From positions 155,430 through 195,279 of the forward strand of contig NW_005434584.1 of NCBI RefSeq assembly GCF_000315625.1: DNA of 39,850 bases. Direction: 5' to 3'. Both the position numbers and the translations under genes were made by a program. Each line of letters opens with the position of its first letter. Position 1 is the stretch's first letter. Below, one piece after another: positions 54-37,820 of the stretch. This DNA is from Guillardia theta CCMP2712 (Eukaryota > Protista > Cryptophyta). The notes beneath the pieces were generated by a model, which was given only the letters and a program-made list of their open reading frames with translations, was not told the DNA's origin and searched no databases.

Positions 54-2294
54 TAGAGCAGGAGAAGAGAGATGAACAGGACGGGATTTATTTTGTCTTC
101 AGCTCCATTTGAGGAGAGAGAAGTTTGGAAATATTTCCTGCAGGTCTTGTCCTTCATCTTTCTGAGACCAACTTGCCTCATGCGCTTCTCCTTCCTGCAG
201 GTTGCTGGTGCTGTCGCCCACATGCACGAGCAGAGGATGATGCACAGAGACATCAAGGTGATATACTTAAACCCTCCTCCTCCTATTGTCTAGCCTAACT
301 GCCCCTCATCATCTTTGTGCTCACCTGATTTGACAGCCAGCTAACATTTTCATCTCTGCAAACAACGTCTTGAAGGTTCGCTTCTTGGGATTGATGACGA
401 ATACAGGTGTATGACAATTTCTTCAGCTTGGCGATCTTGGACTAGGAAGAGTTTTCTCTGCTGAGGTCACTTGCACTGTCCTTCTTATTCGCTCTAAATC
501 TTATTGGCATCCTCGTGTTGGTTTCGTCGTCATTTTCTTGGTCATTTGTTTTGCTCTTGTTGATGATGACAATATATTTTTGTTATTGTTCATGACGCTC
601 ACTTGCATTCAGTCGGTCGAGACTTTCTCCAAGGTAAAAGATTGATTTCATGTTCTCCCTTTCTCTGTTGTTCTCTCGTTATCACCCATCAAACATTGAT
701 CTTCTCCCTCCCTTCCTTTCTCTTGCTCTCCCTTTCTGCCTCCTTCTCACTGGTCTCATTGATGCCGGCAGGTCGGAACTCCCTTGTACATGTCGCCTGA
801 GGTTCTTCACGGGCAGGGCTACGACTTCAAGGTCTCGGCGAAGCTCCTCCTCTTGCTCTCACGGTCTCGCAGTCTGACATGTGGAGTCTGGGATGTCTCC
901 TCTATGAGTTTGCTACTCTCTCCTCCCCCTTCGAGGCGCCGAACCAGGTTCCCCCCGACCTCCCTTCCCCTTCCCCTCCTCCTCCTCTCCTTGCACATCT
1001 GATCTCTCTGAACCTCTGGATTCTGATTTCTTCATCTCCATCGTCTGAGTCAGCCTCCCCCTCGCCTGATCGTGTCCGATTGCTTCATCGTCTGTCAATC
1101 CCCAGTAACAGTATGGCAGAACCTCTACGACATCTTCAAGCGCATCAACGATGGAGACTTCGCTCCTCTCCCCGAGTTGTTCTCTCAAGAGCTCAGGTGC
1201 CGAACCGACGCCTCTAACCCTAAACCCCAAGTCTTCTCCTCTGATTGTGCGAGTAGAGGCCTCGTCAACAGGATGCTGCACAAGGACCCGAAGAAACGGC
1301 CCACGGGTGAGAGAAGATGTGGTGAAGTGTCTGCTCTCCTTCCTCCTTCTCCTCCTCCCTCTCCCCTCCTCCTTTCTCCTCCTCCTCCACCTCCTCCTGC
1401 TCCTCCTCCTACGGACTTCTTCTCTTCGAGTAGTCCTCGCCTCCTCATCCTCTCCTTCAATTTCAGCTTCTCTTTCTGGCACTGACTCCTTCCTTCTGTC
1501 TTCGTCTTCACCTCGCAGCTTCTGAGGCCTTCGCCTTCGCTCAAATGGCCTGCGACTCCTACCAGGAGCGACCGAGTGGACTGATGATGATGGTGAGACA
1601 GTCACACTTGTGGCTGTGTCATGAATCATCTTGACCTGATTCCTTGTGCAGATAGAGATCATTGATCTCTGCCAACTTCTCGACTACGAGGTGAACACAA
1701 GCACACACAAGTTGACTTGATGTTGTGTGATGCTATGGAAGATTTTAAGTCATACCCTATCATTGCCACTTCATCTTCATCTTCATCTTCATCTTCATCT
1801 TCATCTTCATCATCGTCATCGTCATTGTCATCGTCGCTGAAATAATGTTCTTCACTTTGATCCTAGTCAGCCAGCTGCACTGGTTCATCTTTCAGAACTT
1901 CCTCCTGATCTCCTTTTCTAAATTGTTTCTTAATCTGACGACATTCCATCTTATTGCAGGCTCTCTGTCGTGCTCAAGCCCTCCCTCCCCTCACACCAAG
2001 TTTCTTCACGCATGCTCATCCTCATCATGACATCAAGTTTCAATATTTCACTAGCCTTGTCCTCTGGCTCCTCCGCTTCAACGATGTTTCAGTCAGCGAG
2101 GACAGCAGGGACGGCAGCAGGCACCTCGAGACTCTCGACCCTCTCAACGTTTCTTCTCTCCTCCTCGACGCTTGCAAGCAGCTCGGCATCGGCAACGACC
2201 TCTCTCCTGTTCGACTGAAGACGTGAGAAGTTCTCCTCTCCCGCTCCTGTTCCCCTCATACCCTTCCCATGGTTTCTTCCTGGTTGTCATTCCT
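54..2294 (+). pseudogene. Partial duplicate of the NEK-IFT57 gene (kinase C-lobe exons plus IFT57 CH-domain exons), truncated at both ends
   Basis: Near-identical to 18298-20540. The differences I can see are intronic (e.g. 696 T/G, a 3-nt indel near 1447, one TCATCT unit near 1800) or in the first ~90 nt. Identity ends abruptly after TCATTCCT at 2294, inside an intron. Confidence 0.85.
1771..1836 (+). repeat. (TCATCT)n/(TCATCG)n intronic microsatellite
   Basis: Seen directly; the copy at 20011-20082 has one extra unit. Confidence 0.9.
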
Positions 2295-2830
2295 AGTTGG
2301 CATCAACAATGGAGACTTCACTCACACTCTGCCCGAGTTGAGAGAATTCCAGGGCTCTAGACGATGAGCTCTCTTGCTGTGAGATGAGGAAGAAGTTTGT
2401 CAACCTTGAAGAGTCGCCTCCTACTCACAGTCTGGTGGGAAAGCTCGCACGCTGCTGCTCTGCCGAGAGGGCTGAATGGTTAGGACGATCAGCTCCAGCT
2501 CAGATGTCAAGGCACTCAGTGTCTTATCTGAGTACGCTCCTAATCGCCAGGTTTAGGGTTTAGGGTTTTCCATGTGACCTCGAGGATCGCTGCCAGCATG
2601 CAGATCTGGACTCAATGCCCTCGAGGCAGCCGGAGCACCCCACATGAGCTGCCAAGGCATCATGCTGACGAGGACAAGGACCAGGACAAGGATTCAGCGC
2701 TGTTCGATGTCCATCAGCCCGCGCACAGACGACCTGACACTCGCTAACCGAATGAGGCACCTGAAGAGGCAGCTGCGAGACAGACAGACAGTCGGCGCGA
2801 GAAGGCGAGCTGACTCGGCTGGAGGGAACT
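2295..2830 (-). pseudogene. Possible fragment of a spliced minus-strand gene of unknown function, cut at the 2294/2295 junction
   Basis: Minus strand shows GT..AG intron-like segments (e.g. gtgagtagg...ctcacag; gtcacatgg...gattag) between open stretches (AYSDKTLSALTSELELIVLTIQP). No domain recognised. Confidence 0.3.
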
Positions 2831-6400: not shown

Positions 6401-9400
6401 CTGTCCGCGGAGAACGGTCAAGCTGGTTCCCGTCGATGGCACTGATGAGATGAACATGATCTCGTTGTTGATCAGGACATATGTGCCCTGGCTGAACTGA
6501 GTTGCTTTGGTCAACGTCAAGGTGGTCGCAGTGGAGGAGACGTCTTGTAGCAGAACCGATCCTGGATTGAAAGTCCGAACGATGGTTCCGACTCCGTAAG
6601 TCCCCGTGGTGGTGTTGAACTGCCCTCTGTACACCGACAGCGTCGTAGACGTGAGCACAGAGTCAATGAGCAAAATCTCGCTCTTGATCTTGATGTAGTC
6701 GTTGGCGTTAAACCCTGCTGTGGATCCTACTGTCAAGATCTTGGTGGTCGCTGCTGCTCTGCGAGCCGACACCCCTTGGAAGGTGGTCACTGCTACACTC
6801 GCCGTTGAAACACCGTACACTCCGTCGCTAAACCCCGAGCGCAGAAGATAGTCAATCTTGGTCACCTGCTCCGCAGAGTTGCGAAGAGCACCCTTGCTGT
6901 ACGAAAGATCGCCTGGCCAGTAGAGAGGGCCAGGACTCAACGTCTCGGAGTTGGAGCCCTCCGTGAAGTAAACAAGGATCTCCGCACAGGGGTAGGATGC
7001 CCCTGCGTCCGAGGGAAAGAAGAGCTTGAGAGGGTTGGGGGTGTTCGGAGAGAAGCCGAAGCCAGCATTGAGAAGTACAGGGCTGTCAGTGTTGGCGTTC
7101 CACCCGATCGCTGTAAACGCCTCATCGGTCAGAACAGCTCCTGCCTGGGTGCCAACCGTGGAAAGGTAAGTTGGGCAGTTGTCCTGCGAACAAGGGAAGG
7201 TAGTGCAAGGGAACTGTGTGCAGAGTGACCCAGCACACGATGCCGTTCCTGGGCATGAGGGCAGTGGTGTCAAAGCAACATAACCCGCCGGCGTTGTGCA
7301 TGCAGTGGTTGAGCTGCACAAGGTGGGGATGATGTAGGAGCTGCTGCTGCATGTGGGTTGGATGGTAGTCGTGCCAGACGTCGCCTCTGTGAGAGCAATC
7401 TTTCTGACAAGCTCGACGCGAGATGCTACCAGTCCGTTCCTCACCAGGGCCTGAATGGTTGGCCTCGTAGCGCATGTTGTGGCTGACGCTGACACAAATC
7501 GAATCAGAGGTGACGTCACGTAGCCCGATCCCGCATTGATGACCTTGATGCGATACTGGAGTGGAAGAGTCGATGCTGTAAAACCCTTGCTGCTCGCAGT
7601 CAACGAGGAGGACGGTGCGTTGGTGTAGTAATCCACCTGCGTGTCCACGTACTCCAGACCGATCTCTGCCTGGACTCCGCCTGCGGGTGGGGGCTCCACA
7701 ATCACCTTAGGTACTTCACATGCAGAGGCGGACGCGAACATCTCGTTTGCAGTGATCTTGAAGATTAACGATCCCTTCATTCCCTGGAAACCCTTGCTGC
7801 GTTTGACGGTGTAGGCGTTTTCAGAGGCAACGGCCGACACACCGCTCGAGACTCGCATCTGCAGCGTCTTGCGGGTGTTGTACGCTCCATTCGCTGGGTC
7901 CTGAGCTGAGCAGACCTCCATCGCATTCCTGTTGTTCGGAGAGAAGAAGGCGCTTGGATTGGATGTCTTCTCACACTGGCCTTGACACTCGTTCGAAACG
8001 GTGGCAGACAGGGTCAGGGCAGAAGCTGTACAGGGGGATGTTATTGCTGTACCATCAGGGTTCGTACACTTTGATCCTGAGCATCCGCTGCAGGATATCG
8101 TGGCAGTCACCGACAGCCCTGAGGCACCATAACCATAGCCTTCCTGCGTCATCAACACGCCATCAAGGGTCAATCCCTCAGTGGTCCCTGCCACGGCGGT
8201 TGCAAACTTCGTGTAGATGTTGTATGTGCTGTCCGCCGATGCTGTGTCAAAGGCAAAGAACGAGGGTTTGCAGTTGGACTTTTGGTTTGCGGTTTGTGCC
8301 ATATAGTTCTGCTGGTACCCACCAGTTGTAAACAAAATGTCCCTCACTATTGGGATGTTCGCGTAGCCGGTTCCCTGCCGAGTGATCGTGTACTTTGGCA
8401 CACCGTTGCTCACAGAGGTGATTGTTATTTGCAACGTCTGCCCCCCACTCCTCTCAGGTGCATTGAAGATCAAGACGGCATTGGCGCAGTCCGCGAGATT
8501 CGCGTCCGTGGACTTGCCCTTGTACTGCAGCACAAAGTTGTTGTTCACATTCGTCAAAACTGAGGATGCCGACGGAAACGACCATGTCGGGACGCCCATA
8601 GCATTCGCCATCGGGTCCACCAGCCCGTTGGCATTGACTGGAGACGAGGTGATGCTCACGCTGGTGAAGCCATACACAAACCCTACTACATTGGTGCTAG
8701 ACGGCACTGTTACACCAGTAACACGAGAGTTGCCCCACATCGTGCCACTTCTCGAGTAGGTCTGAGAGGTCGCAGACCTGCAGGCCTGGTTGAAGCCGGC
8801 GATGACGGGCGAGTCCATGGAAGAGTGAAACGTGGGAGCCACTGCCGTTGATTGCAAAGTGGCAGCCTGCATCCCTGTAAAGGACGAGTAGGAATGTGAG
8901 CCAGAAACGTGTACTGAAGATGTGTTGAACCCAAGAATGGCCTGGGCTTTCGCTCCTGCGCATGCGCTGATCGCAGGGAATGAAACAGTCGGAGGCGTAA
9001 TGTACCCAGAGCCGCCGTCGGTGACTTGAATGGAGGAGATCACACTTGATGACGTCGTCTGCAAAGTTGCGGTAGCTGTCTTCCCAGATGGAGGTGCAGA
9101 GATCACCAGAGCCCCTGTGCACTTCGTGGTAAAATCCGGATTGGCTGAAGGTGCAGGAACTGTAGTTATCACGATAGACGCAACATAACCAGACGCAACC
9201 TCCGACGAGGTCTTGCGAGCCGAATACTTCTTGAACAACGAGACGGCAGCGTACGCGCTGGTTCCAAGTCCAGTCAGAGAGTCGTACTGATCTCTCTGTT
9301 GCTGGTACATAATCAGGTTGGAGTCTGGCTTCACCTGCACTCTTGATGTGTAGTTGTGTGAAAGATGCACAATCGCTACGGCATCACATGGAGTCTGAGA

Positions 9401-12400
9401 TGACGACGGGTTGGTGAACGTCACTGTCGGGGGGAAGAAGTACCCTGAGCCAGCTTCGGTCAGAGTCACCGATGTCACGCTGCCACCGCTGGCTGAAACG
9501 GTCGCTGTTGCCCGAGTACACAGGTAAGTGTCAGTAGGACACACCAGTGTGTTGGTCGTTGCGTCAACAATCTTATCCACGGACGGGTCTGAGATGGTTA
9601 CCGTCAACCCTGATGCACAGCTGGTTCCGGGGTTGATGATCTCGATTCTCTCGACGCTCGACCTCTGACCCTTGAGCATGAAGATTCCGTCGAAGCTCTG
9701 AGCCACGGTCGTTGCTGGTGGAACAACGCATGTCCCATGAAATCTCGCCGGTCGGAGATATCCGGACCCCCACATGGGAGGGGTGGAAGCCCAGGTGGTT
9801 GGAGCGGAGAAGATGGATGCTGTGGTGCTGGTCAAGGTACCTCCGTTGTTGACGGCGCTCCCCCCGGGGACCTGAGGCTGCTCGATGTTCTTTCCATTCA
9901 CTGTGCACGTTCCAGTCAACGTCCCTCCAAAAACCAGCATCCTCTCAGTGGTCGTTCCCTGCACTTGTACGTTGGAGTGTGGCACAGCCGCAGCAAACTG
10001 GAATCGTGTTCGTTCCTTGATTGTCTTGGAGGCGTCATCCGTAGAGGGAGTGATGTAGGCGTTCTGGTTCGATGGAACGGACTTGAACCTGTACCCAGGA
10101 ATGGTGATGCTGATGCTCTCGCCCTGTCTGATCCATTTCCCCTTCGCCACCTGCAGCTGCAGCTGCGTGTAGATGGTGTAGGGCTTGTTGGCAAGGTCGA
10201 TGCTCCTTGGCTTCTTTCCCTTGAGGTCTGTTACCCAATACACTCCGCCTGCTCCCTGCTTGATGATGTACTCGTTGGACCCAATCATCGCTGTCATGCC
10301 GGTGTACCGACCCACCTGCTCCTTAGGCTTTATCTCACAGTCCTTCACGAAGGATGCTGGAAACTCCTCTTCCACTACAAAGCACGATCCTGATGGGTTG
10401 TAGTCGACGATAGTCTGAGTCACCACGGTGCTCGTCACATTGGTCAACGATACATCGAACACAGGCAGATCAATCTGAGTCAGAGACGTGGATGTGGTGA
10501 CAGACGAAGGCGTCACAGTGGGGATGGAGGTGTACCCGCTGCCTTGCGACGTCAAGTGTGCACTTGCTACCGAGACAAGCACTTTCAGCGCAATCCCAGC
10601 CTTGCCACTCACTGTAGCTGACGGAAAGCCTGTGTACAGCCCTGATGCGGTGACATGCACAGCAGTGCTGCTGCTGTACAGAGATGTTACACTGGCCGTC
10701 GCTGCGGTGACTTGGTAGGTTGCATCGAACACGATAGTGTCTCCTTCCACCAGAGACGTTCCCGCGGCAATGGACACAACCTGCACTCCGACAACCTTGT
10801 ACAGCAGATGCCCGCTTGCAGTTGATGTCACGCCTGAGGAAGCCACGGTAAACGTTTGTCCAGCAAACGCCGACGTTCCAGTCACTTCCGTCAGCCCTCC
10901 ATATCGCACTCGCACGCTCGTGACCGATCCACCTGTGGCCGCAGTGTACTGATTGTTGCGGCACTTGAGCTGCATGCCGACATAGTCTGTCGCTGAAAGG
11001 GATGGGATGGTACTGCTCATCTTGTAGCAGACGTCCTGTGTATAACCGAGCATGTAAGTTCCTGCGTTTGTCACCTTCGTGAGACTCAGCGTGCGGGAGC
11101 CGCTCGAGAAGGTGATGTCGCTGTCCGGTAGGCCCCACGGGCACGACACGCGACTCCAGCACAGGTTCTTGTTCTTGTTGTAGCCGTCGTCGTCAGGAGA
11201 CAACACAAACAAGCCGTCCACGTCTCCGTCGCCTGACCGATGCCTATTCCCGTCCGCCACCCAGCCATCGCTGATGTACGCTCGAGCGCGATCTTCTTGG
11301 TAGTAGTTGAGCTCCCACTCCAGCTGTGTCGAAAACGTGGTGAAGGCCGGGTTAGGAGAGGAGGTCACGCCAAAGATGGGACCCGTGACTGCGACGTACG
11401 ACGGCAGATTTACAAAGAGCATATCTCCGGCATACAAATTCTGTTCCGCGGTCACTGAAAATGTCACATCGGATGTAACTGTTGATCCAAACTGCATCGA
11501 AGTCTTGGCAGATTTCATTCCGCTGTCGATCTCAGTGGTTACAAAGGAGTTCCCTGATACGACTGAGATCGCCTGTGCGGAAGCTTGCGTTGCTTGGTTG
11601 GTGAGTTGGAACTGTACCGTGTACACCGAATAATCGTACAAGTATGCTTGAGCGGTTGCTCCGGTGCCCGTTGGATCCGTAATCACAACCTTCGGGGGGA
11701 GAGTGTAGCCCGATCCAGCAGCAGTGAGAGAGATGGAAGTCACAGACTGGGAGGTCAGAGAGGCAGTGGCTTGTGCCGATGATCCAGTAGCAGACATCAC
11801 TCCAGCACAACTGCTCTTGGTCCAGAATTCCTGCCCAGGTGTCGTGTCGCAGATGACCACGGTAGGATTCGAGTATCCCGAGCCCCCAGCTGTAACAACA
11901 ATTTTGTACAGACCTTGCGTTCTCCTTGCAGAGACGTCAAAGTATGGATCGTACACGAGGGTTGGGATCGATCCAGAATAGATCTGGATGTTGTTGCTGA
12001 GAAACTTGCATCCTGTAGTGAAGGTGGTCGCTGGTACGATCGAAGCGGAATGAAGGTTCGTCCTTGAGTTCATAAACTGCCCATTTCGCACAACTTGGCA
12101 GGAAACGTCTGACTGCGCACTTGACATGCTACTAAATGGCCCGACAGTGATTGTCTGACCCGCAGACAGCTCGTAGTTCGGCTGCAGCTCGGCAGTGATC
12201 CACACGGTGCTGCTAGTCACGTTCGATCCAGAGCGCAAGCTTGACATGATGAACTGACGGTCTGCAATGTACCCAGCGCAACCTGAAGGCTCAGATGGAT
12301 ACCCATACACCATCCTGGTTTTGTCATTCTTGCACAAATACGTCTGCGTTCCCTTGTAGTTCGATGGTGCTGCTTGAGAGTCAACACTCAAAGATATGGC

Positions 12401-15400
12401 AGGGCAGGTCTTTGAGCCCACGTTGTTGTTTGTCATCATGAAACACATTTTATACTTCACATCTTGATTCAACGTCTGACCGGTTTTCAACTGAAATTGA
12501 ATGGTGGATTTGTCGTAGCTGGCAGCGTTGTCCTGGGGGTTCGAGCCAATCGTCTGGAACAAGCCGTTCGAAAGTGCACTGATTGCATATTCATCATACA
12601 AATTCACAGTTGTGCCAGAAGAAAACATCGTCATTCCCGTGAGAGTGAACGTTGTCTGCACGTTAATGTCAATGCTTGGACGCAACGTGATGCAGATCGG
12701 ATTCATGGCTGCTGGTGATGGGTTGAGCTGCCCAATCTCATACTTGTTAAACAGGTTTCGGGTGAGGTACAACGCTTGATGATCGCCTCGAAGGGGACCA
12801 ATCATTGCCTGAGAACTGGCCTGTTTGTTCTGCGCAAATTGCGACTGAACCGTTATGGTCGGACCAGACTGCTCGTTGTCCCCATTCACAAATTGCTTGA
12901 ACTGGAGAACATATATCCACCCAGGGTACATGCAGTTCGTCGCTTGGCCCTTGACAGGGAGCTGGCAGGAGCCCAGGGCAAGTTTGACTACCATCTCCCC
13001 ACTCGTAGAGCTCCAGGTCGTTTTTTCAATGTTTGGAAAATATTGATCTGCTGCAGCTGTTGCCGTCAAAGAGGTCCCAGGTGTATTCGTACCAGTCAGC
13101 CCCGATATGGTAATTTCGGGGCTGAAAGACGTACTGTCCATGTACATGTTCGATCTCAAGGAAATCGTGATCGTGTTGGATTTGGAAACGACCGACGTTG
13201 ACTGCGATATCAGCCTGGTCGGGAAGCCATAAGCGTACGATTTGAGCACACACACATCCCCATCCGTTTCACCATCTTGAAGTGCTCTGTCGACCGAGTT
13301 CTGCACCATCTGCACGTTCTGCGTGAACTGATTGTCTCCTGGACCGAGAGCTGACAAACTCAATGAGACAGTCTGACATGGATTAGCCGACACAGCATTT
13401 TTCAATACGATCGCAAACTTGATGTCCTGCTGTTGAGGGATGGAATAGAACATGTTGTTGGCTGTGTCATCCTGATTCACCGTCAAGACAGTTGTGCCTG
13501 CAGACCAGCTGGTAGTTCTGTGCAACGTTCCACCATTGATGACATCAATGAAGTGGGATGTGGGAGGATTCGATGGCGCTTCGAGTGTCATGGTGTCCCA
13601 GTTGAATGACGGGCAGGCTGTGATGATTGGCTGTGTGACAGTCTGTGAGCCTTGCAACCCTGACAGAGTGATTTGCGCCAAGTTGTTTTGTCCTGCACTG
13701 TTGGATTGCGTGGAGACCCTGTAGTTACTCCGGAGGGTGATGCAAATGTAGTTTGTGACATCAGGGCGAGTGGTTGTTTGTCCGATCTTGTACTTGATAA
13801 AGCCAGGTGCGGCGACGTATCCAACAGTGTTGCCCATGTTCTCCACGCTTTCTGCATTCACAACAGTAGAGCCCTTCGAAACTGTCACTGTCACAGGACA
13901 TGCAGCATTGCCACTGTTAGAATTCTGCCAGTCCCACGACAAGACATACGTGTTGCGTGCAGTCATAATCGTTGACACAGTGATCTTCAGCGCTCCACCA
14001 AGCGACCAGTCCATTTTGGGACTTACGGCCTGCAAGGTCGGGTCACCAATATCAATCTCCGTAGGATTGCCAGCAGAAGAGCACATGTCCGTCAAAGGGA
14101 TGCCACCGTTCAGTCGATTGCTCATCACAGTTATCTTTGGACTGTTGGTCTGGGTTCCACAGAGGCCTTGAAGACTGATCACAGACCCAGAATCGACATT
14201 GAAGTTTGGTGTCATAGTAACAAACACGTGCGTAAGCGATCCGGGATCACTGGAACTCTGAAAGATCGACGTCCTCAGCTTGTTGCCGACCACCTCGATG
14301 ATCTTGGAAGACGGTGAGACATCATTGCTCATCTGAGCAGACACGGAAGTTGAAGATGTGCAGAGGTCGTTGTTTTGGCAAATCTGTCCAGACAAGACAG
14401 CTTTGAGACTCTGGGAAGCTTGAGTATTGGATCCAGTCTTGAGTTTGAACGTGAAGGTTACCACCTCTCCAGCCTGAATGTAGTTGCCAGGTACAAGCTC
14501 GAATGACATGGTTCCAGCAGAGTCGAAATAAGCTTGATTCAAAACCTTGTTGGTCCCTGTTGATCGGAACTTGGCAGGTACGAATGCGTTCGGTGTGCCA
14601 GCCTCGCACTGGCATTTGGACTGGTAGAGGTCAATGTTGCCACTCGGTGTTGCTGAGCCCGACAGTCCGGTGAGTGAAACTGAGGTTGGGTTCACGGAAA
14701 CAGAGTAGATTGTCGCCGAGCTGATCAATGTCACTGTGATGCAGACATCTTGACTGGGCCCGTCGTTGTTTCCAGCAGCGGCCGCATATACAAACGCCGG
14801 CGCTGCTACTGTGCCGACTCCACCTGCTCCTTTCTGCACAGGCATGGGAGGATGGTCGGTCCCAAACCTCACAGATCGGTACTGGTCGAAGGGAACTTGG
14901 TACACCAGGTATTCACTTGTGCATGGAGTAGAAGGGAAGCTCGTGAGGTCTGATACAGCACACCCAAGAGAATTTCCCTCCGCTTGGTAAAAAGCAACGT
15001 TGGCGAGCTGATACCATTTCTCATCAATGCCACCTATCGGTGGCAATGGTCCAAGCCCGTTCTGCTTCCCGTTCACGTCGTAGTTCTGGTACATAGACAC
15101 CTTGTTGATGTACACGCCGGTGATTTGAAGAGCTGTCGGCATGTAAAGTCGCAACGTTTCTCGCTGAGAGTCCCAGTAGCACATGGAGAACGCGTTTGCC
15201 TTGATCTGCTTGAGATCAAAGGCATTGGAAGAAAGGTCTTGCACGATCCCATAGCATCCGGCTATCCCAGGCCCTGTGGCCGCCTGTTGTGATGAAACAG
15301 ATGCCGAGGCAGCCCATGGCTTGTTGATCACCTCCGAGATGCTCACAGATGCAGATGGATTGTTGAGCCATTGTACAGTGCTCTCAGTGGTATCCGATCT

Positions 15401-15750
15401 GTATGCTCCAAAGAGGTTGGAGCTTCCAGAGAACCTGGGGAGGAAGATCTCGATCACCGTGTTGGCTGACAGGATGTCCGAGCCCGACTTCCATGATCCC
15501 AAGGAACCCCAGTAGATCTTCATGTCGGTCGCCTTTAGATCAGTGACACCTCCTTCCAGCTGCAACTGAGCCATCTCGGCGACCGTGTACTTCACGCCTC
15601 CCGATGTCACCACGGCTGCCAACGTCCTCCCAGCGAACAAGCTCAAAAGAAGCAAGGCTGCCTGCTCAAAAGTCTGTGAGAAGAAAAGGAAACGCAAGAA
15701 AACAACTATCTCACCCCCCATTGGAGACAACATGCCCGCGCACGCTGCAT
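3438..15750 (-). CDS. Giant (~4,100 aa) type I membrane/surface protein with tandem beta-repeat modules; one frame break at ~6300-6350
   Basis: ATG at 15750 plus a 53-nt GT-AG intron (15714-15662) gives signal peptide MQRARACCLQWG-AALLLLSLFAGRTLA, in frame with ORF 15733-6257. ORF 6299-3438 continues the same repeat series and ends in an S/T stalk, a TM helix (VGAIVGGVIGGVVGAALLGFLAYKFL) and a short P/Y-rich tail. Confidence 0.85.
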
Positions 15751-17173: not shown

Positions 17174-17582
17174 TCACACCGCGGTTGAACGGTTTATCAG
17201 AGCCTGAAGCCTAGTAGAGAGACGGTCGGAGAGTTCGCCCCCCCCGGCGGGCCCGGGGCGGCCCGGCCGGGAGACACTTGCCCGGATGGATTGGGTGATG
17301 AAACCGTACGGTAGATTGTGCCTTTCTTTTTCAGTCAATAGAAGGATTGTGGAGGAGAGCAGGGAGGAGAGCAGATATCCTTTGGCGAGGGTGCGGTTGA
17401 GAGCGTTGTGAGAGAGCTAGGATCTTCTTGCTATGCGACGAAGTTGAAAGAGATGAATAGATGCCGCAGCATGCTCTTGAGATGAAGATATACCCGCTGC
17501 TGCCCCTGACATGAACGACCGACCCCTTGGTCAAATACTCCCTTTGCATGAGAAGAGACTGAGTTCGAAGGTTGTCTGAGAC

Positions 17583-20500
17583 ATGGAGGAGGAGGAGGAG
17601 GAGGAGGGGGTGCCTCAGCTCCATGGGGCTTCACCCAATGTGGATACGAGGAGAAGGCCAGCGACGAGAGGGACGAGGAAGGAGAGCGAGAGCCTGTCAG
17701 ACCTGGAAGACATAATCCCTGTCAACCAAGGTCGCCTGCAGATGTATGCCGTCGGCAAGAAGGTCCTTGCACACACTCGTAATCTGTTGCGCACACTCCC
17801 CCCACCCCCCTTGCTCTATCTTTCCCTCCCCCCTCGCATACACACACTTTCACTTCTTTCCCTCATCTTGTGCGTGCTTAGATAGGCAGTGGAAAGTTCT
17901 CAGTGGTATTTCGAGCGAGGATGTCAGACGGCAGGTGAAGGAGGAGGGTGGTGGAGGAGAGGAGAGGGTGAGCACATGGCTGCAGGAACGTGGCGCTGAA
18001 GAAGATCAACATCTTCGACATGATGGACGCGAAGAGCCGAAACAAATGTCTGAGAGAAGTAGATCAACTAGTCGGGAAGAGAGCGACGAGAGTGAAGGAC
18101 CTGTCGCAGGTTCACATGCTGCGAAGCATCAGCAAGCACGAGAACCTCATCGAGTATCTCGACGCCTTCATCGAGAACAATGAGCTCATGGTGAGGTGGT
18201 ACTGAGAGAAATGATATGTATGATCTGCTTGTTCAGATCGTGTTTGAGTGGGCTGAGAATGGAGACTTGCGAAGGCTCCTGAGAAGAGCGACAGGTAAGA
18301 GCAGGAGAAGAGAGATGAACAGGACGGGAATGATTTTGTCTTCAGCTCCATTTGAGGAGAGAGAAGTTTGGAAATATTTCCTGCAGGTCTTGTCCTTCAT
18401 CTTTCTGAGACCAACTTGCCTCATGCGCTTCTCCTTCCTGCAGGTTGCTGGTGCTGTCGCCCACATGCACGAGCAGAGGATGATGCACAGAGACATCAAG
18501 GTGATATACTTAAACCCTCCTCCTCCTATTGTCTAGCCTAACTGCCCCTCATCATCTTTGTGCTCACCTGATTTGACAGCCAGCTAACATTTTCATCTCT
18601 GCAAACAACGTCTTGAAGGTTCGCTTCTTGGGATTGATGACGAATACAGGTGTATGACAATTTCTTCAGCTTGGCGATCTTGGACTAGGAAGAGTTTTCT
18701 CTGCTGAGGTCACTTGCACTGTCCTTCTTATTCGCTCTAAATCTTATTGGCATCCTCGTGTTGGTTTCGTCGTCATTTTCTTGGTCATTTGTTTTGCTCT
18801 TGTTGATGATGACAATATATTTTTGTTATTGTTCATGACGCTCACTTGCATTCAGTCGGTCGAGACTTTCTCCAAGGTAAAAGATTGATTTCATGTTCTC
18901 CCTTTCTCTGTTGTTCTCTCGTTATCACCCATCAAACAGTGATCTTCTCCCTCCCTTCCTTTCTCTTGCTCTCCCTTTCTGCCTCCTTCTCACTGGTCTC
19001 ATTGATGCCGGCAGGTCGGAACTCCCTTGTACATGTCGCCTGAGGTTCTTCACGGGCAGGGCTACGACTTCAAGGTCTCGGCGAAGCTCCTCCTCTTGCT
19101 CTCACGGTCTCGCAGTCTGACATGTGGAGTCTGGGATGTCTCCTCTATGAGTTTGCTACTCTCTCCTCCCCCTTCGAGGCGCCGAACCAGGTTCCCCCCG
19201 ACCTCCCTTCCCCTTCCCCTCCTCCTCCTCTCCTTGCACATCTGATCTCTCTGAACCTCTGGATTCTGATTTCTTCATCTCCATCGTCTGAGTCAGCCTC
19301 CCCCTCGCCTGATCGTGTCCGATTGCTTCATCGTCTGTCAATCCCCAGTAACAGTATGGCAGAACCTCTACGACATCTTCAAGCGCATCAACGATGGAGA
19401 CTTCGCTCCTCTCCCCGAGTTGTTCTCTCAAGAGCTCAGGTGCCGAACCGACGCCTCTAACCCTAAACCCCAAGTCTTCTCCTTTGATTGTGCGAGTAGA
19501 GGCCTCGTCAACAGGATGCTGCACAAGGACCCGAAGAAACGGCCCACGGGTGAGAGAAGATGTGGTGAAGTGTCTGCTCTCCTTCCTCCTTCTCCTCCTC
19601 CCTCTCCCCTCCTCCTTTCTCCTCCTCCTCCACCTCCTCCTGCTCCTCCTCCTACGGACTTCTTCTCTTCGAGTAGTCCTCGCCTCCTCCTCTCCTTCAA
19701 TTTCAGCTTCTCTTTCTGGCACTGACTCCTTCCTTCTGTCTTCGTCTTCACCTCGCAGCTTCTGAGGCCTTCGCCTTCGCTCAAATGGCCTGCGACTCCT
19801 ACCAGGAGCGACCGAGTGGACTGATGATGATGGTGAGACAGTCACACTTGTGGCTGTGTCATGAATCATCTTGACCTGATTCCTTGTGCAGATAGAGATC
19901 ATTGATCTCTGCCAACTTCTCGACTACGAGGTGAACACAAGCACACACAAGTTGACTTGATGTTGTGTGATGCTATGGAAGATTTTAAGTCATACCCTAT
20001 CATTGCCACTTCATCTTCATCTTCATCTTCATCTTCATCTTCATCTTCATCTTCATCATCGTCATCGTCATTGTCATCGTCGCTGAAATAATGTTCTTCA
20101 CTTTGATCCTAGTCAGCCAGCTGCACTGGTTCATCTTTCAGAACTTCCTCCTGATCTCCTTTTCTAAATTGTTTCTTAATCTGACGACATTCCATCTTAT
20201 TGCAGGCTCTCTGTCGTGCTCAAGCCCTCCCTCCCCTCACACCAAGTTTCTTCACGCATGCTCATCCTCATCATGACATCAAGTTTCAATATTTCACTAG
20301 CCTTGTCCTCTGGCTCCTCCGCTTCAACGATGTTTCAGTCAGCGAGGACAGCAGGGACGGCAGCAGGCACCTCGAGACTCTCGACCCTCTCAACGTTTCT
20401 TCTCTCCTCCTCGACGCTTGCAAGCAGCTCGGCATCGGCAACGACCTCTCTCCTGTTCGACTGAAGACGTGAGAAGTTCTCCTCTCCCGCTCCTGTTCCC

Positions 20501-21873
20501 CTCATACCCTTCCCATGGTTTCTTCCTGGTTGTCATTCCTTGTCAACCTCTCCTGATCGCTGTTCTGGCTGAGCATGTGCCACAGGGGCTACGGGGAAGC
20601 CGTTTGCTCCCTCCTTCACTCCCTCCTTCTCCTCACCATGGCGAGAATGAAACGCAAGCTCGCGGTCATGTCGCATTCAGCGCGTGAGGAAGAAGAGGAA
20701 GAAGAGATCGGCCAAATGGAGGAGGAGGAGGAGGAGGACAGCGCGTGCGGATGGTCGTTATCCCCTCCCTCCCTCCATTTGTTGTGACTCGCTTCAAGGC
20801 CGGAAGCTCTAGACGGAGAGGCAGAGGAGGAGGCGGAGGGGGAGGGACAGGACCATCTGGTTGCTGTGCAGCCACCATGGGTGCCATGCGCGAGTGAGGA
20901 CCTGGAAAGGTCGACCCGCTGCTGGGGAGAGGAGCAGACAGCTGACGTCATGCTCAGGTTGAGCCTGCAGGAGCGACAGCAGGAGGAGTGGAGGATGCGG
21001 ATAGAGGTGTATGAGGGAGACTCGCCTTCTGGCCCGTCAAGGAAGTCCGCAGGCTCTCTCGAGGGACGTGAAGATGCAGCGGGCAAGGGCGGAGGAGATA
21101 GGTGAGACAGGATCAGATGTGGGAGGAGGGAGAGAAGGTAGAGGTTTGAATGCTGAGACGTCTGGGGCGTGAAGGAGGAGGGAAGAGAGGAAGGCAGCAT
21201 AGAGTGCTTGTGCATCTGCGTCGAATCGTCTCCATGAGCTTCTTGGCAGGTTTACAGCTGCGAGGGGTGGTAGAGACTTGCCAGCAGGAGGCGAGCTCGA
21301 TCAAGACGAGGGAAAGAGGACTGAACTCGAATGTGAGAGAGCGGGAGAGAGGCAGGCGGATTCTGATGAGATGCTTGTAGGACCACCAAGAGACGATCAG
21401 AGAGCTGAGAGAGGCAGCAGAGTGGGTGAAGAGCCTGCAGGAGTCCAGCTGAGAACAATTCACAGGGAGCTCACACAAGTCAGTGCCTCGTTCGAGCGCG
21501 AAAACGAGAGGATCGCACAGGTAAAATCAGAGGAGGCCCGAGATGCATGGCTGTTGAAGAACAAGGGGGTGAGGAGGGAGATACGCAGGAAATCTGAGCA
21601 AGAGTCCAGCTGCAGGCACATCATGACCAGGTGGCGGAGGAGCTGGAGGCTTCGAGAGTCCGTGTGGAGGACTTGGAGGTCAACGTGCATGACCGAAGCC
21701 CCACAGACAACATGCGCAAGGCAATCCCTTCCTTGCTCCCGCTCACACTTGATCCTCCTCGCCTGCTGCTCTGACTGCTGGAGCAGGCGATTCGCAAGCT
21801 GAAGGAGGAGCTTGCTGAGATGGAGCTGAGAATGGGGGTGGCGCTACACGAGCGGGGAGAAATGAAGCGTTGA
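17583..21873 (+). CDS. NIMA-related (NEK6/7-like) Ser/Thr kinase fused to an IFT57/HIPPI-like module; >20 short introns
   Basis: Manually spliced motifs: IGSGKFSVV, VALKKINIFDMMDAKSRNKCLREV, FEWAENGDL, HRDIKPANIFI, KLGDLGLGRVFS, VGTPLYMSPE, KSDMWSLGC, DPKKRP. These continue in frame into IEIIDLCQLLDYE...KFQYFTSLVLWLL...DPLNVSSLLLDACKQLG...LSPVRLKTGYGEAVCSLL and coiled coil ...IKTRERGLNSN...VAEELE...AIRKLKEELAEMELRMGVALH, which match IFT57. The 3' end is uncertain (stop at 21873, or up to ~22036 if another intron is used). Confidence 0.85.
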
Positions 21874-22119
21874 AATCTTTAGACCCTCTTTGTTCCGCCT
21901 GCAGGACATGGCAAGAGCCCTGGGCAGCAACTCGTCTGAGGCCTCGAAGCTTCACGTGAGGGATAGGAAGCGACTTAGAGGGAGAGAGAGCGCGAGAAGG
22001 AAGCGAGAACGAAGGGAGGTTCATGACGAGTATTAATCAGAGAGAAGACGAGGTATGAGGGGAAGGAGGGAGTGGGTGAGAGGAGGGCAGCCATGTTGCC
22101 ATCACGGGGGTTGGTTGTC

Positions 22120-25100
22120 TCAAGTCTTGTCGCTCACCTCCAGGAACTTGTTGAGTTTGTGCATCTGCCTCCTTCCTCCCACGATCGCGGCTCGATGAGG
22201 AGCAGACGAGACCGACAGTCCATGAGCTCCTGCCCCTGTCCGAAGGCCTCGGGCTCCGACCTGCTCCTCTATGAGCTTACTGTTGGCTATCTGTGTCATG
22301 TTGCGCGTTAGGATTGGATGCGTCTTCAGCATGCCCTGCAGTCGCTCGATCTCCTTCGACTCAGCCGCGAAGGCCTTCACGTCCTTCTCGTCCGCTTCGT
22401 CTCCCACCTCCAGGCTCTGCGACATCTTCGCCGTCCAGCTCTGCGACCGGCTTTTCCTTTGCCTCCTCTCCTTCAGCTTCGCCAGCTTCTGCGCCCATCG
22501 CACGCGCTTGCGCAAGGGCGCGAACTGCTCGCTGTGGGCGGAGACTCTGGTGACGCCATGCAGCCCGTCGGTGAGGTTGAGCACCTTCTTGAGAGACCCG
22601 CGCACGTCTCGAGGGAGCAGGAGGACGCTGTAGCCGCGAGGAGCCGAGGGATGGTGCGCCGCTCGGCCGCTCCTGTGGGTGTAGAGGAAGCGAGAGAGTG
22701 GCAGGTCGAAGTGGATGACATGGCGCACGTGCGGGACGTCGAGGCCTCTGGCCGCCACGTCAGTCGCCACCAGCACCCCCGAGTCGCCGCTGCTGCTGAA
22801 GCGATCCATCATCTTGAGGCGAGCCCGCTGCTGCATGGAGGCATGGAAGGGAAAGGCCGGGAGATCGAGCGCTGCGAGGATGGCGGCGAGACGTCGAACT
22901 AGAGAGATGTGGTTTACGAAGATGATGGTGCGACCAGGGTTGTGGAGGAGGAAGAAGTAGATGAAGAGATCTCTCTCCTCTTCCTTGCACTTCACGACGA
23001 TCTCCTTGACTCGCGACGAGACGATCCTCGAGGTTGTCACGTTGATCAGGATCGGCTTGGTTGACATCTTCATGATCCTCCTCGCCACCTTGAACATGTT
23101 GAAGTAGCTCGTTGGCAGCTCCATTTCTTCCTTCACCCTTTTCCTCTTAGTGGCATTTCCCCTCTCTGCTGCCTGCGAGTCCTTCGCCCTCCTGAGTAGG
23201 TAGCGAGGTTGACGTGGAGAGAATGTAGCGGAGAAGAGGAAGGCTTGTCTAAGAGGAGGAGAAACTTCGTCTCCAACCACCTCTCCCGAAGTCTCCTCTT
23301 GCTCGGCGACCAACCTCACCAGTCCCTTACTTGACTCAGTGCATCTCTTCTCCAGCTCAGTAAGAGGGGCAGGGCTTGCGATGCCCTTGCCCGACAGCTT
23401 CATCGGTCGAGCTTGAGGAAGAAGATCCAACAGTCGCCGAAGCTCTCGGAACCGCCCGGACTCAACAAGTCTGTCAGCCTCGTCCAGGACTATGAAGCGA
23501 AGCTTGAGCATGGCAGGACGCAGAACCGCATGGTCCGACTCCAGCAGCTCCCACAATCTTCCCTGTCAACTCCAAACCAACGAACGAGGAGAAGTTCAAG
23601 AGTCAGAGGCAGAAGAGCGTTTGCAATCAGCGAGAGAGCGAGCAAGGGAGGAGGAGAAAGAGCGAGAGGATGAGTTGCAAGAGGAGAAGGTGGTCGTGGA
23701 AGGAGAGAGAAGAGATCACCGGTGTGCCCACAACAATGGCTGGGTGACGAGAAAGCTGCCTTTCTTGCTTGACTTCTGCCAGGCCCCCGACCACAGGGAT
23801 CGCCTTAGGAAAAGAAATGGAGGAGGAGGAGAAGTTAGTGGCTTGAGCTGCGAGCTGAAGTACAGAGTTCAAGTGATGACAGACTTGCAGGGACAACTCC
23901 CTAGTAGGGGAGACAATGAGTGCTTCTATTTGCCAGGCCTGCGCGTTTGAGGAAGAGGAGGAGTTTGTGCGTGAGGCTCGTTCTTCATAGAGAGAGAGGA
24001 GGTGGTGAAGAATTGGAAGGCCGTACGAGAGCGTCTTTCCTGCTCCTGTCTCAGCGATACCGATGACGTCTCTCCTTGAGAAACGTAACAAGTCAGATAA
24101 AGGTAGGTACAAGTCAAAGTCGGTTCACCTCATTTCAATGGCTGCCAATATTGATCGATTCTGAATCTCTGTAGGCGTGACAAACCCTAGACGAGAAAGG
24201 GCATAATGGAGGTGCGGATGGAGGAGAAGATGCTTCCAAGCAGGAAGAAGTTCGATCTTCTGTTGTTGATGCTTCCAAGCAGGAAGAAGTTCGATCTTCT
24301 GTTGTTCTGCTTCAACTGTTCCATTCTCCATCTGCATCTTGTCGACTGACTCTTCGTCACCACGTCTTCCTTTCTTCCTCCTCGTCTCACTTGCAGTAGC
24401 ATTTGATGCCACTCGGTTCTGGCTCGCTGAAGCATTTGATGCTGGTCTGTCTGTTTTGCCCGGTGCTCCATCTGTCCATCTCTTGGATGAAGCGCATTTA
24501 GCATCGTGCTCCGCTAAGAAATGTGAGGTGTATCGCTCCATCAACTTATCTCTTCCTCCAGCAAAGTTCCCCTCCCACCGCTTCTTTCTGATGTTGAAGA
24601 CGTGGAGGGGAAAGTCAGACCCCGGAAGCTCCTCGTCCTTGAACGTGATGAAACCTGACTTAGGTAGCGCTCCTTTCTTCTTCATGATCTCCCTCCGCTT
24701 CCGGTTCACCACCTCCAACCATGCTTGGGCATCCACCGCAGGAGCTTCTCGCTCCTTCTCATCTGCCTCCTTCAGGGCAGCGGATGTTGAGGTTCCATGA
24801 TCGACAGGCATCTTGAGTCGGAGAGGAGAGTCAGCGTGTCGCTCAGCGTCGCATTCCACTACGTTCTCCTCGAGGTTCAGTCGTCCGATTTCTTTTCCTT
24901 TGCTGGAGTAAAGCAATGAAGAGTTGCTTGCGATGAAGCACCTGATCCCATTCACTTCGATGGCTTCCCATCCCGACGGCAGTCGACCAGTTTCTCCTCC
25001 TCCTCCATCCACTTCGATCAGTTCAGACTCGCTCAATTCGTCACCTGAGCCCAAGCTCTCATCCTCCTCATCCATGTCGAAGTTCACTGTATCAGGGGAT

Positions 25101-37720: not shown

Positions 37721-37820
37721 NNNNNNNNNNNNNNNNNNNNNNNNNNNNNNNNNNNNNNNNNNNNNNNNNNNNNNNNNNNNNNNNNNNNNNNNNNNNNNNN
37801 NNNNNNNNNNNNNNNNNNNN
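37721..37820. other. Assembly gap (100 N)
   Basis: Run of N. Confidence 1.

What the first reader, a model, noticed from the sequence alone, without database searches (positions are those of the whole stretch)
17583..21873. NEK6/7-type kinase fused to an apparently full-length IFT57 subunit
Seen: canonical GT-AG splicing gives one open frame from the kinase end (DPKKRPT|ASEAFAFAQMACDSYQERPSGLMMM|IEIIDLCQLLDYE) into an IFT57-like CH domain (FQYFTSLVLWLL; LKTGYGEAVC, cf. IFT57 LKxGYGExVC). An acidic linker and C-terminal coiled coil follow (LKEELAEMELRMGV, cf. IFT57 LKQETVEMDIRIGI). Established: IFT57 is an IFT-B2 subunit pairing with IFT38, and NEK kinases regulate ciliary length and disassembly. 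Inference: a kinase that could be built into IFT trains in place of IFT57, a direct way to deliver a ciliary kinase. Catalytic motifs (VALK, HRD, DLG, SPE) are intact.
Basis: partly seen in the sequence, partly recalled or inferred. Interest (0 to 1): 0.75.

Follow-up and report, generated by a model that had tools for sequence, protein, structure and literature searches.

The report
NEK kinase fused to IFT57 domain
This is a real, expressed gene of the alga Guillardia theta that joins an active NEK6/7-type kinase to a full-length copy of the flagellar transport protein IFT57; it belongs to an old family found in many flagellated protists and already noted in ciliates, whose function has not been tested.

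Summary
Window 17583-21873 (+) is one 26-exon gene of Guillardia theta CCMP2712 (GUITHDRAFT_144686). It encodes a 677-residue protein: a NEK6/7-like kinase (Pfam Pkinase, 224 bits; best solved relative NEK7) running after about 20 residues into a full-length IFT57 domain (153 bits, cut-off 40).

One 2266-base cDNA contig matches all 26 exons at 100% identity. Spliced contigs from three further studies show the same joins.

The architecture is not new. A 2017 Stentor kinome preprint reported NEK kinases with a C-terminal IFT57 domain in ciliates. My search found about 80 such protein clusters, from cryptophytes, Palpitomonas, haptophytes, oomycetes, a pelagophyte, dinoflagellates and ciliates. 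Their kinase domains form one clade (support 99), and all 76 checked keep the catalytic residues.

G. theta also has a separate, better-scoring canonical IFT57 and a single IFT38. The idea that the kinase rides IFT trains as an alternative IFT57 stays inferred; a predicted pairing with IFT38 gave only weak support (0.47, best control 0.01).

Side findings: a 99.4% partial duplicate 18 kb upstream, and a public gene model with four errors.

Verdict: a new member of a known but uncharacterised kind.

The parts
17365..21881 (+). Transcribed span of the NEK-IFT57 gene (GUITHDRAFT_144686), as covered by one cDNA contig. It has 26 exons; the 5' UTR begins at or before 17365.
   Evidence: L015 aligns at 100% identity in 26 blocks. 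Contigs of runs X1-X3 show the same joins.
17583..21873 (+). Coding sequence, 2034 bases, 677 residues plus stop. Exons: 17583-17762, 17882-17934, 17986-18058, 18110-18190, 18237-18294, 18346-18386, 18444-18500, 18580-18618, 18670-18708, 18856-18876, 19015-19074, 19116-19190, 19363-19439, 19500-19549, 19759-19832, 19892-19930, 20206-20468, 20586-20753, 20799-20909, 20958-21006, 21053-21101, 21250-21332, 21381-21421, 21466-21520, 21610-21720, 21787-21873.
   Evidence: Each exon's translation is found in P0014 at the expected residue, and the total of 2034 bases gives 677 residues plus the stop. Splice sites were checked.
17583..19832 (+). Fifteen exons for the short N-terminal tail and the NEK6/7-type kinase domain, including its natural C-terminal helix (residues 1-326).
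   Evidence: Pfam Pkinase at residues 55-306, 224.5 bits. Best solved relative is human NEK7 at 290-292 bits, against NEK1 at 180 and NEK2 at 148. Catalytic residues are intact.
19759..19930 (+). Junction. Exon 19759-19832 ends the kinase where human NEK7 ends. Exon 19892-19930 is the first IFT57 exon (profile position 1 at residue 326). About 20 residues lie between the two Pfam domains.
   Evidence: Joins 19549|19759, 19832|19892 and 19930|20206 appear in three studies and in L015.
19892..20753 (+). IFT57-type calponin-homology domain (three exons), followed by the start of the acidic linker.
   Evidence: Exon 20206-20469 scores 37.6 bits over IFT57 profile positions 17-96. Exon 20587-20751 scores 20.9 bits over positions 97-145. 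It aligns to the CH region of Chlamydomonas IFT57, chain 8ruy_M residues 78-253.
20799..21873 (+). Acidic linker and C-terminal coiled coil of the IFT57-like half (nine exons), ending in the conserved IFT57 C-terminal motif.
   Evidence: The last exon hits IFT57 profile positions 338-358. Residues 567-671 of P0014 align to Chlamydomonas IFT57 residues 342-445.
21721..21786 (+). GC-AG intron before the last exon. The public gene model misses it.
   Evidence: The donor is GC. The join is present in X1 and X3 contigs and in L015. The public model P0015 reads through it.
55..2297 (+). Partial duplicate of 18298-20543 (GUITHDRAFT_144684): the kinase C-lobe exons plus the first large CH exon, then a stop codon straight after the residues LKT.
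   Evidence: 99.4% identity, with the differences falling in introns. It is the only other copy in the genome. The public model P0016 equals residues 170-427 of the fusion. Its specific 3' sequence is present in RNA contigs of three studies.

Best explanation
Window 17583-21873 is one expressed gene of Guillardia theta. It encodes a catalytically competent NEK6/7-type kinase joined, with almost no linker, to a full-length but diverged IFT57 paralogue (CH domain, acidic linker, coiled coil). It is the cryptophyte member of an old NEK-IFT57 family that appears vertically inherited in Cryptista, Haptista, stramenopiles and alveolates.

Shown: the gene structure, the single mRNA, both domains, the intact catalytic residues, the family and its single kinase clade, and the separate canonical IFT57 and single IFT38 in the genome.

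Inferred: the IFT57-like half acts as a docking module. Most likely it pairs through its coiled coil with IFT38 and so places the kinase on a subset of IFT-B complexes, in the train or at the flagellar base. There the kinase would phosphorylate IFT, motor or axonemal targets, as other NEKs do in controlling flagellar length and disassembly.
For: One cDNA contig matches all 26 exons at 100% identity and carries one uninterrupted ORF.

Spliced contigs of three further studies show the same joins, with no depth in the junction introns.

Three G. theta and two Hanusia phi transcript isoforms all carry the fusion.

Pfam gives Pkinase at 224 bits and IFT57 at 153 bits. NEK7 is the best solved relative. 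Chlamydomonas IFT57 is hit in both the CH and coiled-coil parts.

About 80 clusters with the same architecture were found, in named ciliates, haptophytes, oomycetes, Chrysophaeum, Azadinium and Palpitomonas.

The kinase tree puts all 76 fusions in one clade (SH-aLRT 99), with subclades that follow taxonomy.

All 76 keep the catalytic residues.

An IFT57-like ORF that looked stand-alone is preceded by kinase exons on the same strand.

Predicted pairing with the IFT38 coiled coil scored 0.47 against a best control of 0.01; the three runs agree in at least 73% of contacts and the partner's pLDDT is at least 77.
Against: The docking step is untested. The complex prediction is rated weak, and it may only reflect likeness to the solved IFT57/IFT38 pair.

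The IFT57-like half evolves far faster than the kinase: 62% against 98% identity between Guillardia and Hanusia.

It fits the canonical profile less well than the genome's own IFT57, so its partner could have changed.

Raw RNA reads of run X17 were too few (16) to measure isoform ratios.

The tree holds no animal NEK6/7 and no full-length canonical IFT57. Its root, and the separation of the fused IFT57 copies from canonical IFT57, are therefore not established.
Confidence: 0.55

Rival explanations
1. The IFT57-like half no longer joins IFT-B. Its coiled coil serves only to dimerise or scaffold the kinase, as coiled coils do in other NEKs that activate by trans-autophosphorylation, or it binds a different partner. 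The protein would then act in the cytoplasm or at the basal body, independently of trains.
For: The IFT57-like half evolves fast (62% identity against 98% for the kinase). It fits the canonical IFT57 profile less well than the separate canonical gene. The IFT38 pairing prediction is only weak. From my own knowledge, NEK6/7 proper lack any dimerising tail and need a partner for activation.
Against: The whole IFT57 architecture, CH domain included, is retained collinearly across the family (profile positions about 1-354 in most of 76 proteins). A bare dimeriser would not need that. The C-terminal IFT57 motif is conserved. The IFT38 pairing passed its controls.
Confidence: 0.3
2. In cryptophytes the IFT57-like tail is a decaying remnant. 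Only the kinase is under selection, and the tail is tolerated baggage.
For: The divergence between Guillardia and Hanusia is asymmetric, and the acidic linker is only 36% identical. One region of the coiled coil appears shorter than in human IFT57; this was judged by eye against a sequence recalled from memory and was not computed.
Against: A 350-residue open frame spread over eleven exons is kept in Guillardia, Hanusia, a Rhodomonas-like transcript and an uncultured relative. It still scores 153-162 bits on the IFT57 profile end to end. The CH domain and coiled coil are 65-69% identical, well above the linker.
Confidence: 0.08
3. There is no fusion. The apparent gene is two neighbouring genes joined by read-through, by chimeric transcript assembly across the 2.2 kb duplicate, or by a genome misassembly.
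For: The junction lies inside a stretch present twice at 99.4% identity. De Bruijn contigs branch at 20469, and one contig joins the 5' end of copy B to the 3' end of copy A.
Against: The exons unique to copy B on both sides are linked in one 100%-identical cDNA contig. There is no in-frame stop and no IFT57-only transcript. The same fusion is seen in Hanusia and in about 80 other protein clusters. The kinase has no stop codon unless an intron is retained. Two direct repeats on one contig allow only one linear order.
Confidence: 0.02

Closest known systems
NEK kinases with a C-terminal IFT57 domain in Stentor coeruleus (SteCoe_18659, SteCoe_22983) and other ciliates (Stentor kinome preprint, bioRxiv 10.1101/168187)
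   Same: The domain order is the same: a NEK kinase and then an IFT57 domain in one protein. Ciliate proteins of this type (Blepharisma, Paramecium, Ichthyophthirius, Moneuplotes) fall in the same kinase clade as the G. theta protein.
   Different: The preprint describes the architecture as a ciliate feature. Here it is in a cryptophyte, and it also occurs in haptophytes, oomycetes, a pelagophyte, dinoflagellates and Palpitomonas. The G. theta IFT57-like half is among the more diverged. No member has a tested function.
Human NEK7 / NEK6
   Same: The kinase domain scores 290-292 bits against NEK7, far above NEK1 (180) and NEK2 (148). The catalytic residues and the activation-loop Ser are conserved. 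The kinase ends at the same point as NEK7.
   Different: NEK6/7 are kinase-only proteins, whereas this one continues into 350 residues of IFT57. The position I recall as the autoinhibitory Tyr97 of NEK7 is Leu here and in most relatives; the role of Tyr97 rests on my memory. Orthology to animal NEK6/7 was not tested by a tree.
Canonical IFT57 (Chlamydomonas IFT57 in solved IFT-B trains, 8bd7/8ruy; the G. theta orthologue on contig 48)
   Same: The layout is the same: CH domain, acidic linker, coiled coil and the C-terminal motif. It passes the Pfam IFT57 threshold and aligns to both ends of Chlamydomonas IFT57.
   Different: It is a second, diverged copy. The genome's canonical gene scores higher exon for exon. 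It carries a kinase at its N-terminus. Membership of IFT-B is not shown.

Membership tests
Protein kinase, NEK6/7 subfamily | Complete protein kinase domain with catalytic Lys, alphaC Glu, HRD Asp, DLG (DFG-type) Asp and APE-type Glu | tested here: met
   Pfam Pkinase 224.5 bits over profile positions 1-258 of 263. All these residues are present.
Protein kinase, NEK6/7 subfamily | Closer to NEK6/7 than to other NEK subfamilies | tested here: met
   Against solved structures: NEK7 290 bits, NEK1 180, NEK2 148. UniRef names the public model a NEK6-subfamily kinase. No tree including animal NEK6/7 was made.
Protein kinase, NEK6/7 subfamily | Kinase-only architecture (short N-terminal tail, no C-terminal domain) | tested here: not met
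   A 350-residue IFT57 domain follows the kinase.
IFT57 (Pfam PF10498) | Scores above the curated family threshold | tested here: met
   P0014 scores 153 bits and the Hanusia orthologue 161.6 bits, against a cut-off of 40. The exons hit collinearly.
IFT57 (Pfam PF10498) | Full-length layout: CH domain, linker, C-terminal coiled coil with the terminal motif | tested here: met
   Profile positions 1-358 of 360 are covered in Hanusia. Both ends align to Chlamydomonas IFT57.
IFT57 (Pfam PF10498) | Is the organism's orthologue of the IFT-B2 subunit | tested here: not met
   A separate gene on contig 48 fits the profile better (51, 47.5, 23.5, 21.6 and 21.8 bits). The fused copy is a paralogue.
IFT57 (Pfam PF10498) | Coiled-coil heterodimer with IFT38/CLUAP1 | tested here: inconclusive
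   Predicted complex with the single G. theta IFT38 scored 0.47 against a best control of 0.01. The verdict was weak support; that mark was reached by 51 of 78 solved complexes and 2 of 108 mismatched pairs.
IFT57 (Pfam PF10498) | Travels in IFT trains / localises to flagella | not testable with these tools
   This needs tagging and imaging, or flagellar proteomics.
NEK-IFT57 fusion kinases (as reported in ciliates) | NEK kinase followed by an IFT57 domain in one reading frame and one mRNA | tested here: met
NEK-IFT57 fusion kinases (as reported in ciliates) | Kinase domain groups with those of the other fusion proteins | tested here: met
   One clade of 83 rows (76 fusions and 7 truncated ones) with SH-aLRT 99, apart from 30 non-fusion NEKs. 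The tree used the quick method and is unrooted.
NEK-IFT57 fusion kinases (as reported in ciliates) | IFT57-like half of the fusion type rather than the canonical type | tested here: inconclusive
   A profile built from 77 non-cryptophyte fusions scores the window's two main CH exons at 80 bits and the canonical gene's at 80.5. Pfam gives 58.5 and 98.5 for the same exons. The tree does not resolve canonical against fused copies.

The most novel reading that the evidence does not exclude
The NEK-IFT57 protein is a genuine alternative IFT-B2 subunit. It would have arisen once before the split of Cryptista, Haptista, stramenopiles and alveolates. It would replace IFT57 beside IFT38 in a fraction of IFT-B complexes, so that some trains carry a built-in active kinase. 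That would be a hard-wired way to deliver or position a length- or disassembly-regulating kinase, lost or never present in animals, fungi and green algae.
Probability: 0.25. Interest if true: 0.7.

Novelty: new member of a known kind. Interest (0 to 1): 0.4.

Why it matters
How regulatory kinases reach and act on the intraflagellar transport machinery is an open question. Here a catalytically intact NEK kinase is fused to a complete IFT-B2 subunit and kept for a very long time across several eukaryotic supergroups. That is a natural experiment pointing to a direct kinase-train link.

The G. theta case adds no new principle, because the architecture was noted in ciliates in 2017. It does show that the family is not a ciliate oddity. 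It also provides a transcript-verified gene model and points to tractable relatives (Tetrahymena, Paramecium, Phytophthora) in which the idea can be tested. In the library I could search, I found no functional study of any member.

Tried and rejected
- **Joined protein not built.** Exons were searched one by one by reference. The full-length protein was used only as the database entries returned by the tools (P0014, P0007).
- **Splice-site enumeration.** Listing splice-site combinations to fill the joins that read laying did not show gave far too many solutions, and one run gave none because I had set an exon end wrongly. The cDNA contig L015 settled the structure.
- **phmmer with the 88-residue CH exon** against 1.8 billion representatives gave only 6 hits. 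Two were repetitive giants, which I ignored. It did lead to the Hanusia orthologue.
- **Word search with the IFT57-like half alone** found only the two cryptophyte clusters. The whole protein was needed to find the family.
- **Raw RNA reads of run X17.** Only 16 were laid, patchily, so they give no information on isoform ratios or transcript ends.
- **Complex prediction with IFT38** returned weak support (0.47, best control 0.01). I do not use it as proof.
- **Tree of the IFT57-like halves.** Only canonical fragments were available, so it did not resolve fused from canonical copies.
- **NEK7 Tyr97-equivalent position.** It is Leu in fusion and non-fusion relatives alike, so it does not distinguish them.
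- **Upstream of the window.** It reads N (withheld), so the 5' context of the partial duplicate could not be seen.
- **Wloga et al. 2006** on Tetrahymena NEKs is not held.
- **A first Pfam call** failed on a one-base coordinate slip and was corrected.
Full report
**Organism and locus**

The window is contig 90 (336,493 bases) of an 87.1 Mb, 669-contig assembly. The gene's product sits in a 90% cluster with EKX37860.1 / XP_005824840.1, [quoted passage not shown]. UniRef calls it a "NEK6-subfamily protein kinase", and it lies on a contig of exactly that length. An earlier scan note had already named the organism.

**Gene structure**

I then laid Logan contigs from three independent studies (X1, X2, X3) and raw reads of one RNA run on 17400-22100 (4701 letters).

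- The contigs are spliced, so they are RNA-derived.
- They show 15 listed GT-AG joins, including the three across the kinase/IFT57 junction: 19549|19759, 19832|19892 and 19930|20206 (splice sites checked).
- Depth in the junction introns is zero.
- The exon lengths add up to the contig length only if the intron 19191-19362 is also removed. This follows from my arithmetic and was later confirmed.
- The joins not listed by the tool could not be recovered by enumeration.

The matter was settled when the protein searches returned a 677-residue transcript-derived protein (P0014; MMETSP transcript and a JGI sample). Its encoding contig L015 is 2266 bases with one uninterrupted 2034-base ORF. L015 aligns to the window at 100% identity in 26 blocks from 17365 to 21881. 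The translation of every exon of my model is found in P0014 at the expected residue.

This single cDNA contig links the kinase exons that exist only at this locus (17583-18294) with the IFT57 exons that exist only here (20586-21873). The last intron (21721-21786) is GC-AG.

**The two halves**

- Pfam on P0014 gives Pkinase at residues 55-306 (224.5 bits) and IFT57 at 153 bits, against a cut-off of 40.
- Exon by exon, the IFT57 hits are collinear: profile positions 17-96, 97-145 and 338-358.
- Against solved structures the kinase is closest to human NEK7 (290-292 bits), with NEK1 at 180 and NEK2 at 148. It ends where NEK7 ends.
- The IFT57-like half aligns to Chlamydomonas IFT57 of the solved IFT-B trains (8ruy, 8bd7) in both its CH domain and its C-terminal coiled coil.
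- A language-model feature search puts it with IFT57 clusters (score 0.92), with CLUAP1 next at 0.82.

**It is not the organism's IFT57**

A six-frame scan of the whole genome with the IFT57 profile finds a separate gene on contig 48 with clearly higher scores (51, 47.5, 23.5, 21.6 and 21.8 bits). Apart from that gene, the only other strong hits are the window gene and its partial copy. The Cluap1/IFT38 profile finds a single strong locus (336.6 bits). The fused copy is therefore a diverged paralogue beside a canonical IFT57 and one IFT38.

**Relatives**

- The CH exon alone found a Hanusia phi protein in which the match starts at residue 335.
- Hanusia has two transcript isoforms (620 and 665 residues). 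Both are fused, and the IFT57 profile is covered from position 1 to 358 of 360.
- Guillardia and Hanusia are 98% identical in the kinase and 62% in the IFT57-like half.
- A word search with the whole protein listed 120 of 797 strong hits. Most of those from about rank 30 onward carry both Pkinase and IFT57.
- Local profile searches confirm 76 full fusions with the IFT57-like part starting right after the kinase.
- Named sources are Palpitomonas bilix, Chrysotila carterae, Chrysochromulina tobinii, Phytophthora pseudosyringae, Aphanomyces euteiches, Chrysophaeum taylorii, Azadinium spinosum, Blepharisma stoltei, Paramecium, Ichthyophthirius and Moneuplotes.
- A 384-residue ORF from metagenomes looked like a stand-alone IFT57-like protein. 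It is preceded on the same strand by three ORF pieces with kinase hits, so it is another fusion gene with introns.
- A Rhodomonas salina fragment shares its junction peptide with a 638-residue fused protein.

**Single clade**

In a tree of 113 kinase domains (IQ-TREE quick, LG+C20), all 76 fusions plus 7 truncated or partial ones form one clade with SH-aLRT 99. They stand apart from 30 non-fusion NEKs. Inside the clade the groups follow taxonomy:

- Palpitomonas with cryptophytes;
- haptophytes;
- oomycetes with ochrophytes;
- dinoflagellates with ciliates.

This fits one old fusion inherited vertically. However, the tree is unrooted, used the quick method, and lacks animal NEK6/7.

All 76 keep the catalytic Lys, alphaC Glu, HRD Asp, DLG Asp, activation-loop Ser and (75 of 76) the SPE Glu.

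Whether the fused IFT57 copies form a clade apart from canonical IFT57 is unresolved.

**Literature**

In the held library, a single paper connects IFT57 domains with kinases: the Stentor kinome preprint (bioRxiv 10.1101/168187). It reports two NEK kinases with a C-terminal IFT57 domain and says the architecture is found in other ciliates but not in most systems. Searches for functional work found none. So the kind is known, its wide distribution seems not to have been written up, and its function is untested.

**Mechanism**

- The shown facts are an active-looking NEK kinase, a complete IFT57 layout that is retained family-wide, and a single IFT38.
- From my own knowledge of the IFT-B literature (not checked against a paper here), IFT57 pairs with IFT38 through coiled coils in IFT-B2, and NEKs regulate ciliary length and disassembly.
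- The most likely working is therefore that the IFT57-like half docks the kinase onto IFT-B beside IFT38.
- A predicted complex of the G. theta IFT38 coiled coil with residues 515-677 of the fusion scored 0.47, against a best control of 0.01. The three runs agreed in at least 73% of contacts and the partner's pLDDT was at least 77. The tool rates this as weak support, and since the IFT57/IFT38 pair is solved it may reflect likeness only.
- The main rival is a docking-independent role of the coiled coil, such as dimerisation or a new partner. The fast evolution of this half favours that rival.

**The duplicate**

Window 55-2297 is a 99.4% copy of 18298-20543. Both ends of the copied stretch lie in introns, and the differences between the copies are in introns as well. 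It is the only other copy in the genome. It is the public model GUITHDRAFT_144684, which equals residues 170-427 of the fusion: the kinase C-lobe without the ATP-binding lobe, plus the first large CH exon, then a stop.

RNA contigs in three studies branch at 20469. One arm is spliced to 20586. The other reads on into sequence found only after the upstream copy. Depths in X2 were 20.2 and 11.3. So the fragment is transcribed at least at its 3' end.

This also explains a 427-residue "isoform" in the databases. It may be a chimeric assembly. The sequence upstream of the window is withheld, so where the fragment's transcript starts is unknown.

**Public model**

The 692-residue NCBI model differs from the transcripts at four places:

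- it keeps intron 18059-18109;
- it keeps intron 20910-20957;
- it starts the exon after 21520 too late;
- it misses the GC-AG intron, so it loses the conserved C-terminal IFT57 motif.

**Verdict**

This is a new member of a known but uncharacterised kind, of moderate interest.

Noticed in passing
window 55-2297 (compared with 18298-20543): A young partial duplicate of the middle of the gene (99.4% identical, with the differences in introns), annotated as GUITHDRAFT_144684. It could encode only a kinase C-lobe plus one CH exon. Its own 3' sequence appears in RNA contigs of three studies. The two copies flank the giant surface-protein gene at 3438-15750.
   Followed up: partly
window 18059-18109, 20910-20957, 21521-21609, 21721-21786: The public 692-residue gene model (XP_005824840.1) disagrees with the transcripts at four places: two retained introns, a wrong acceptor, and a missed GC-AG intron. 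As a result it lacks the conserved IFT57 C-terminal motif.
   Followed up: yes
window 19549-19564: An alternative donor 15 bases downstream adds five residues (GERRC) inside the kinase tail in one MMETSP isoform (682 residues). Other isoforms of 614 and 427 residues end early through retained introns.
   Followed up: partly
P0014 against P0007 (Guillardia against Hanusia): Divergence within one protein is strongly asymmetric: kinase 98% identical, CH domain 69%, coiled coil 65%, acidic linker 36%.
   Followed up: partly
P0113 (Aphanomyces euteiches, 1160 residues): The precomputed Pfam list gives a kinesin motor domain together with Pkinase and IFT57 in one predicted protein. This is either a triple fusion or a merged gene model.
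   Followed up: no
window 19572-19700: The CT-rich stretch in the intron before the junction exon matches dozens of places across the genome at 76-91% identity. It is a dispersed low-complexity motif.
   Followed up: no
window 17400-22100, run X17: All 16 raw RNA reads laid had the first mate on the + strand. They lay only downstream of 19441. They are too few to interpret strand or transcript start.
   Followed up: no
window 22120-23556 (- strand): A 478-residue open frame converges on the 3' end of the gene. By eye its sequence looks like an RNA helicase. RNA contigs run on from 21860 past 22100.
   Followed up: no
window 37721-37820: A run of 100 N (an assembly gap) lies inside the repeat-rich right end of the window.
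   Followed up: no
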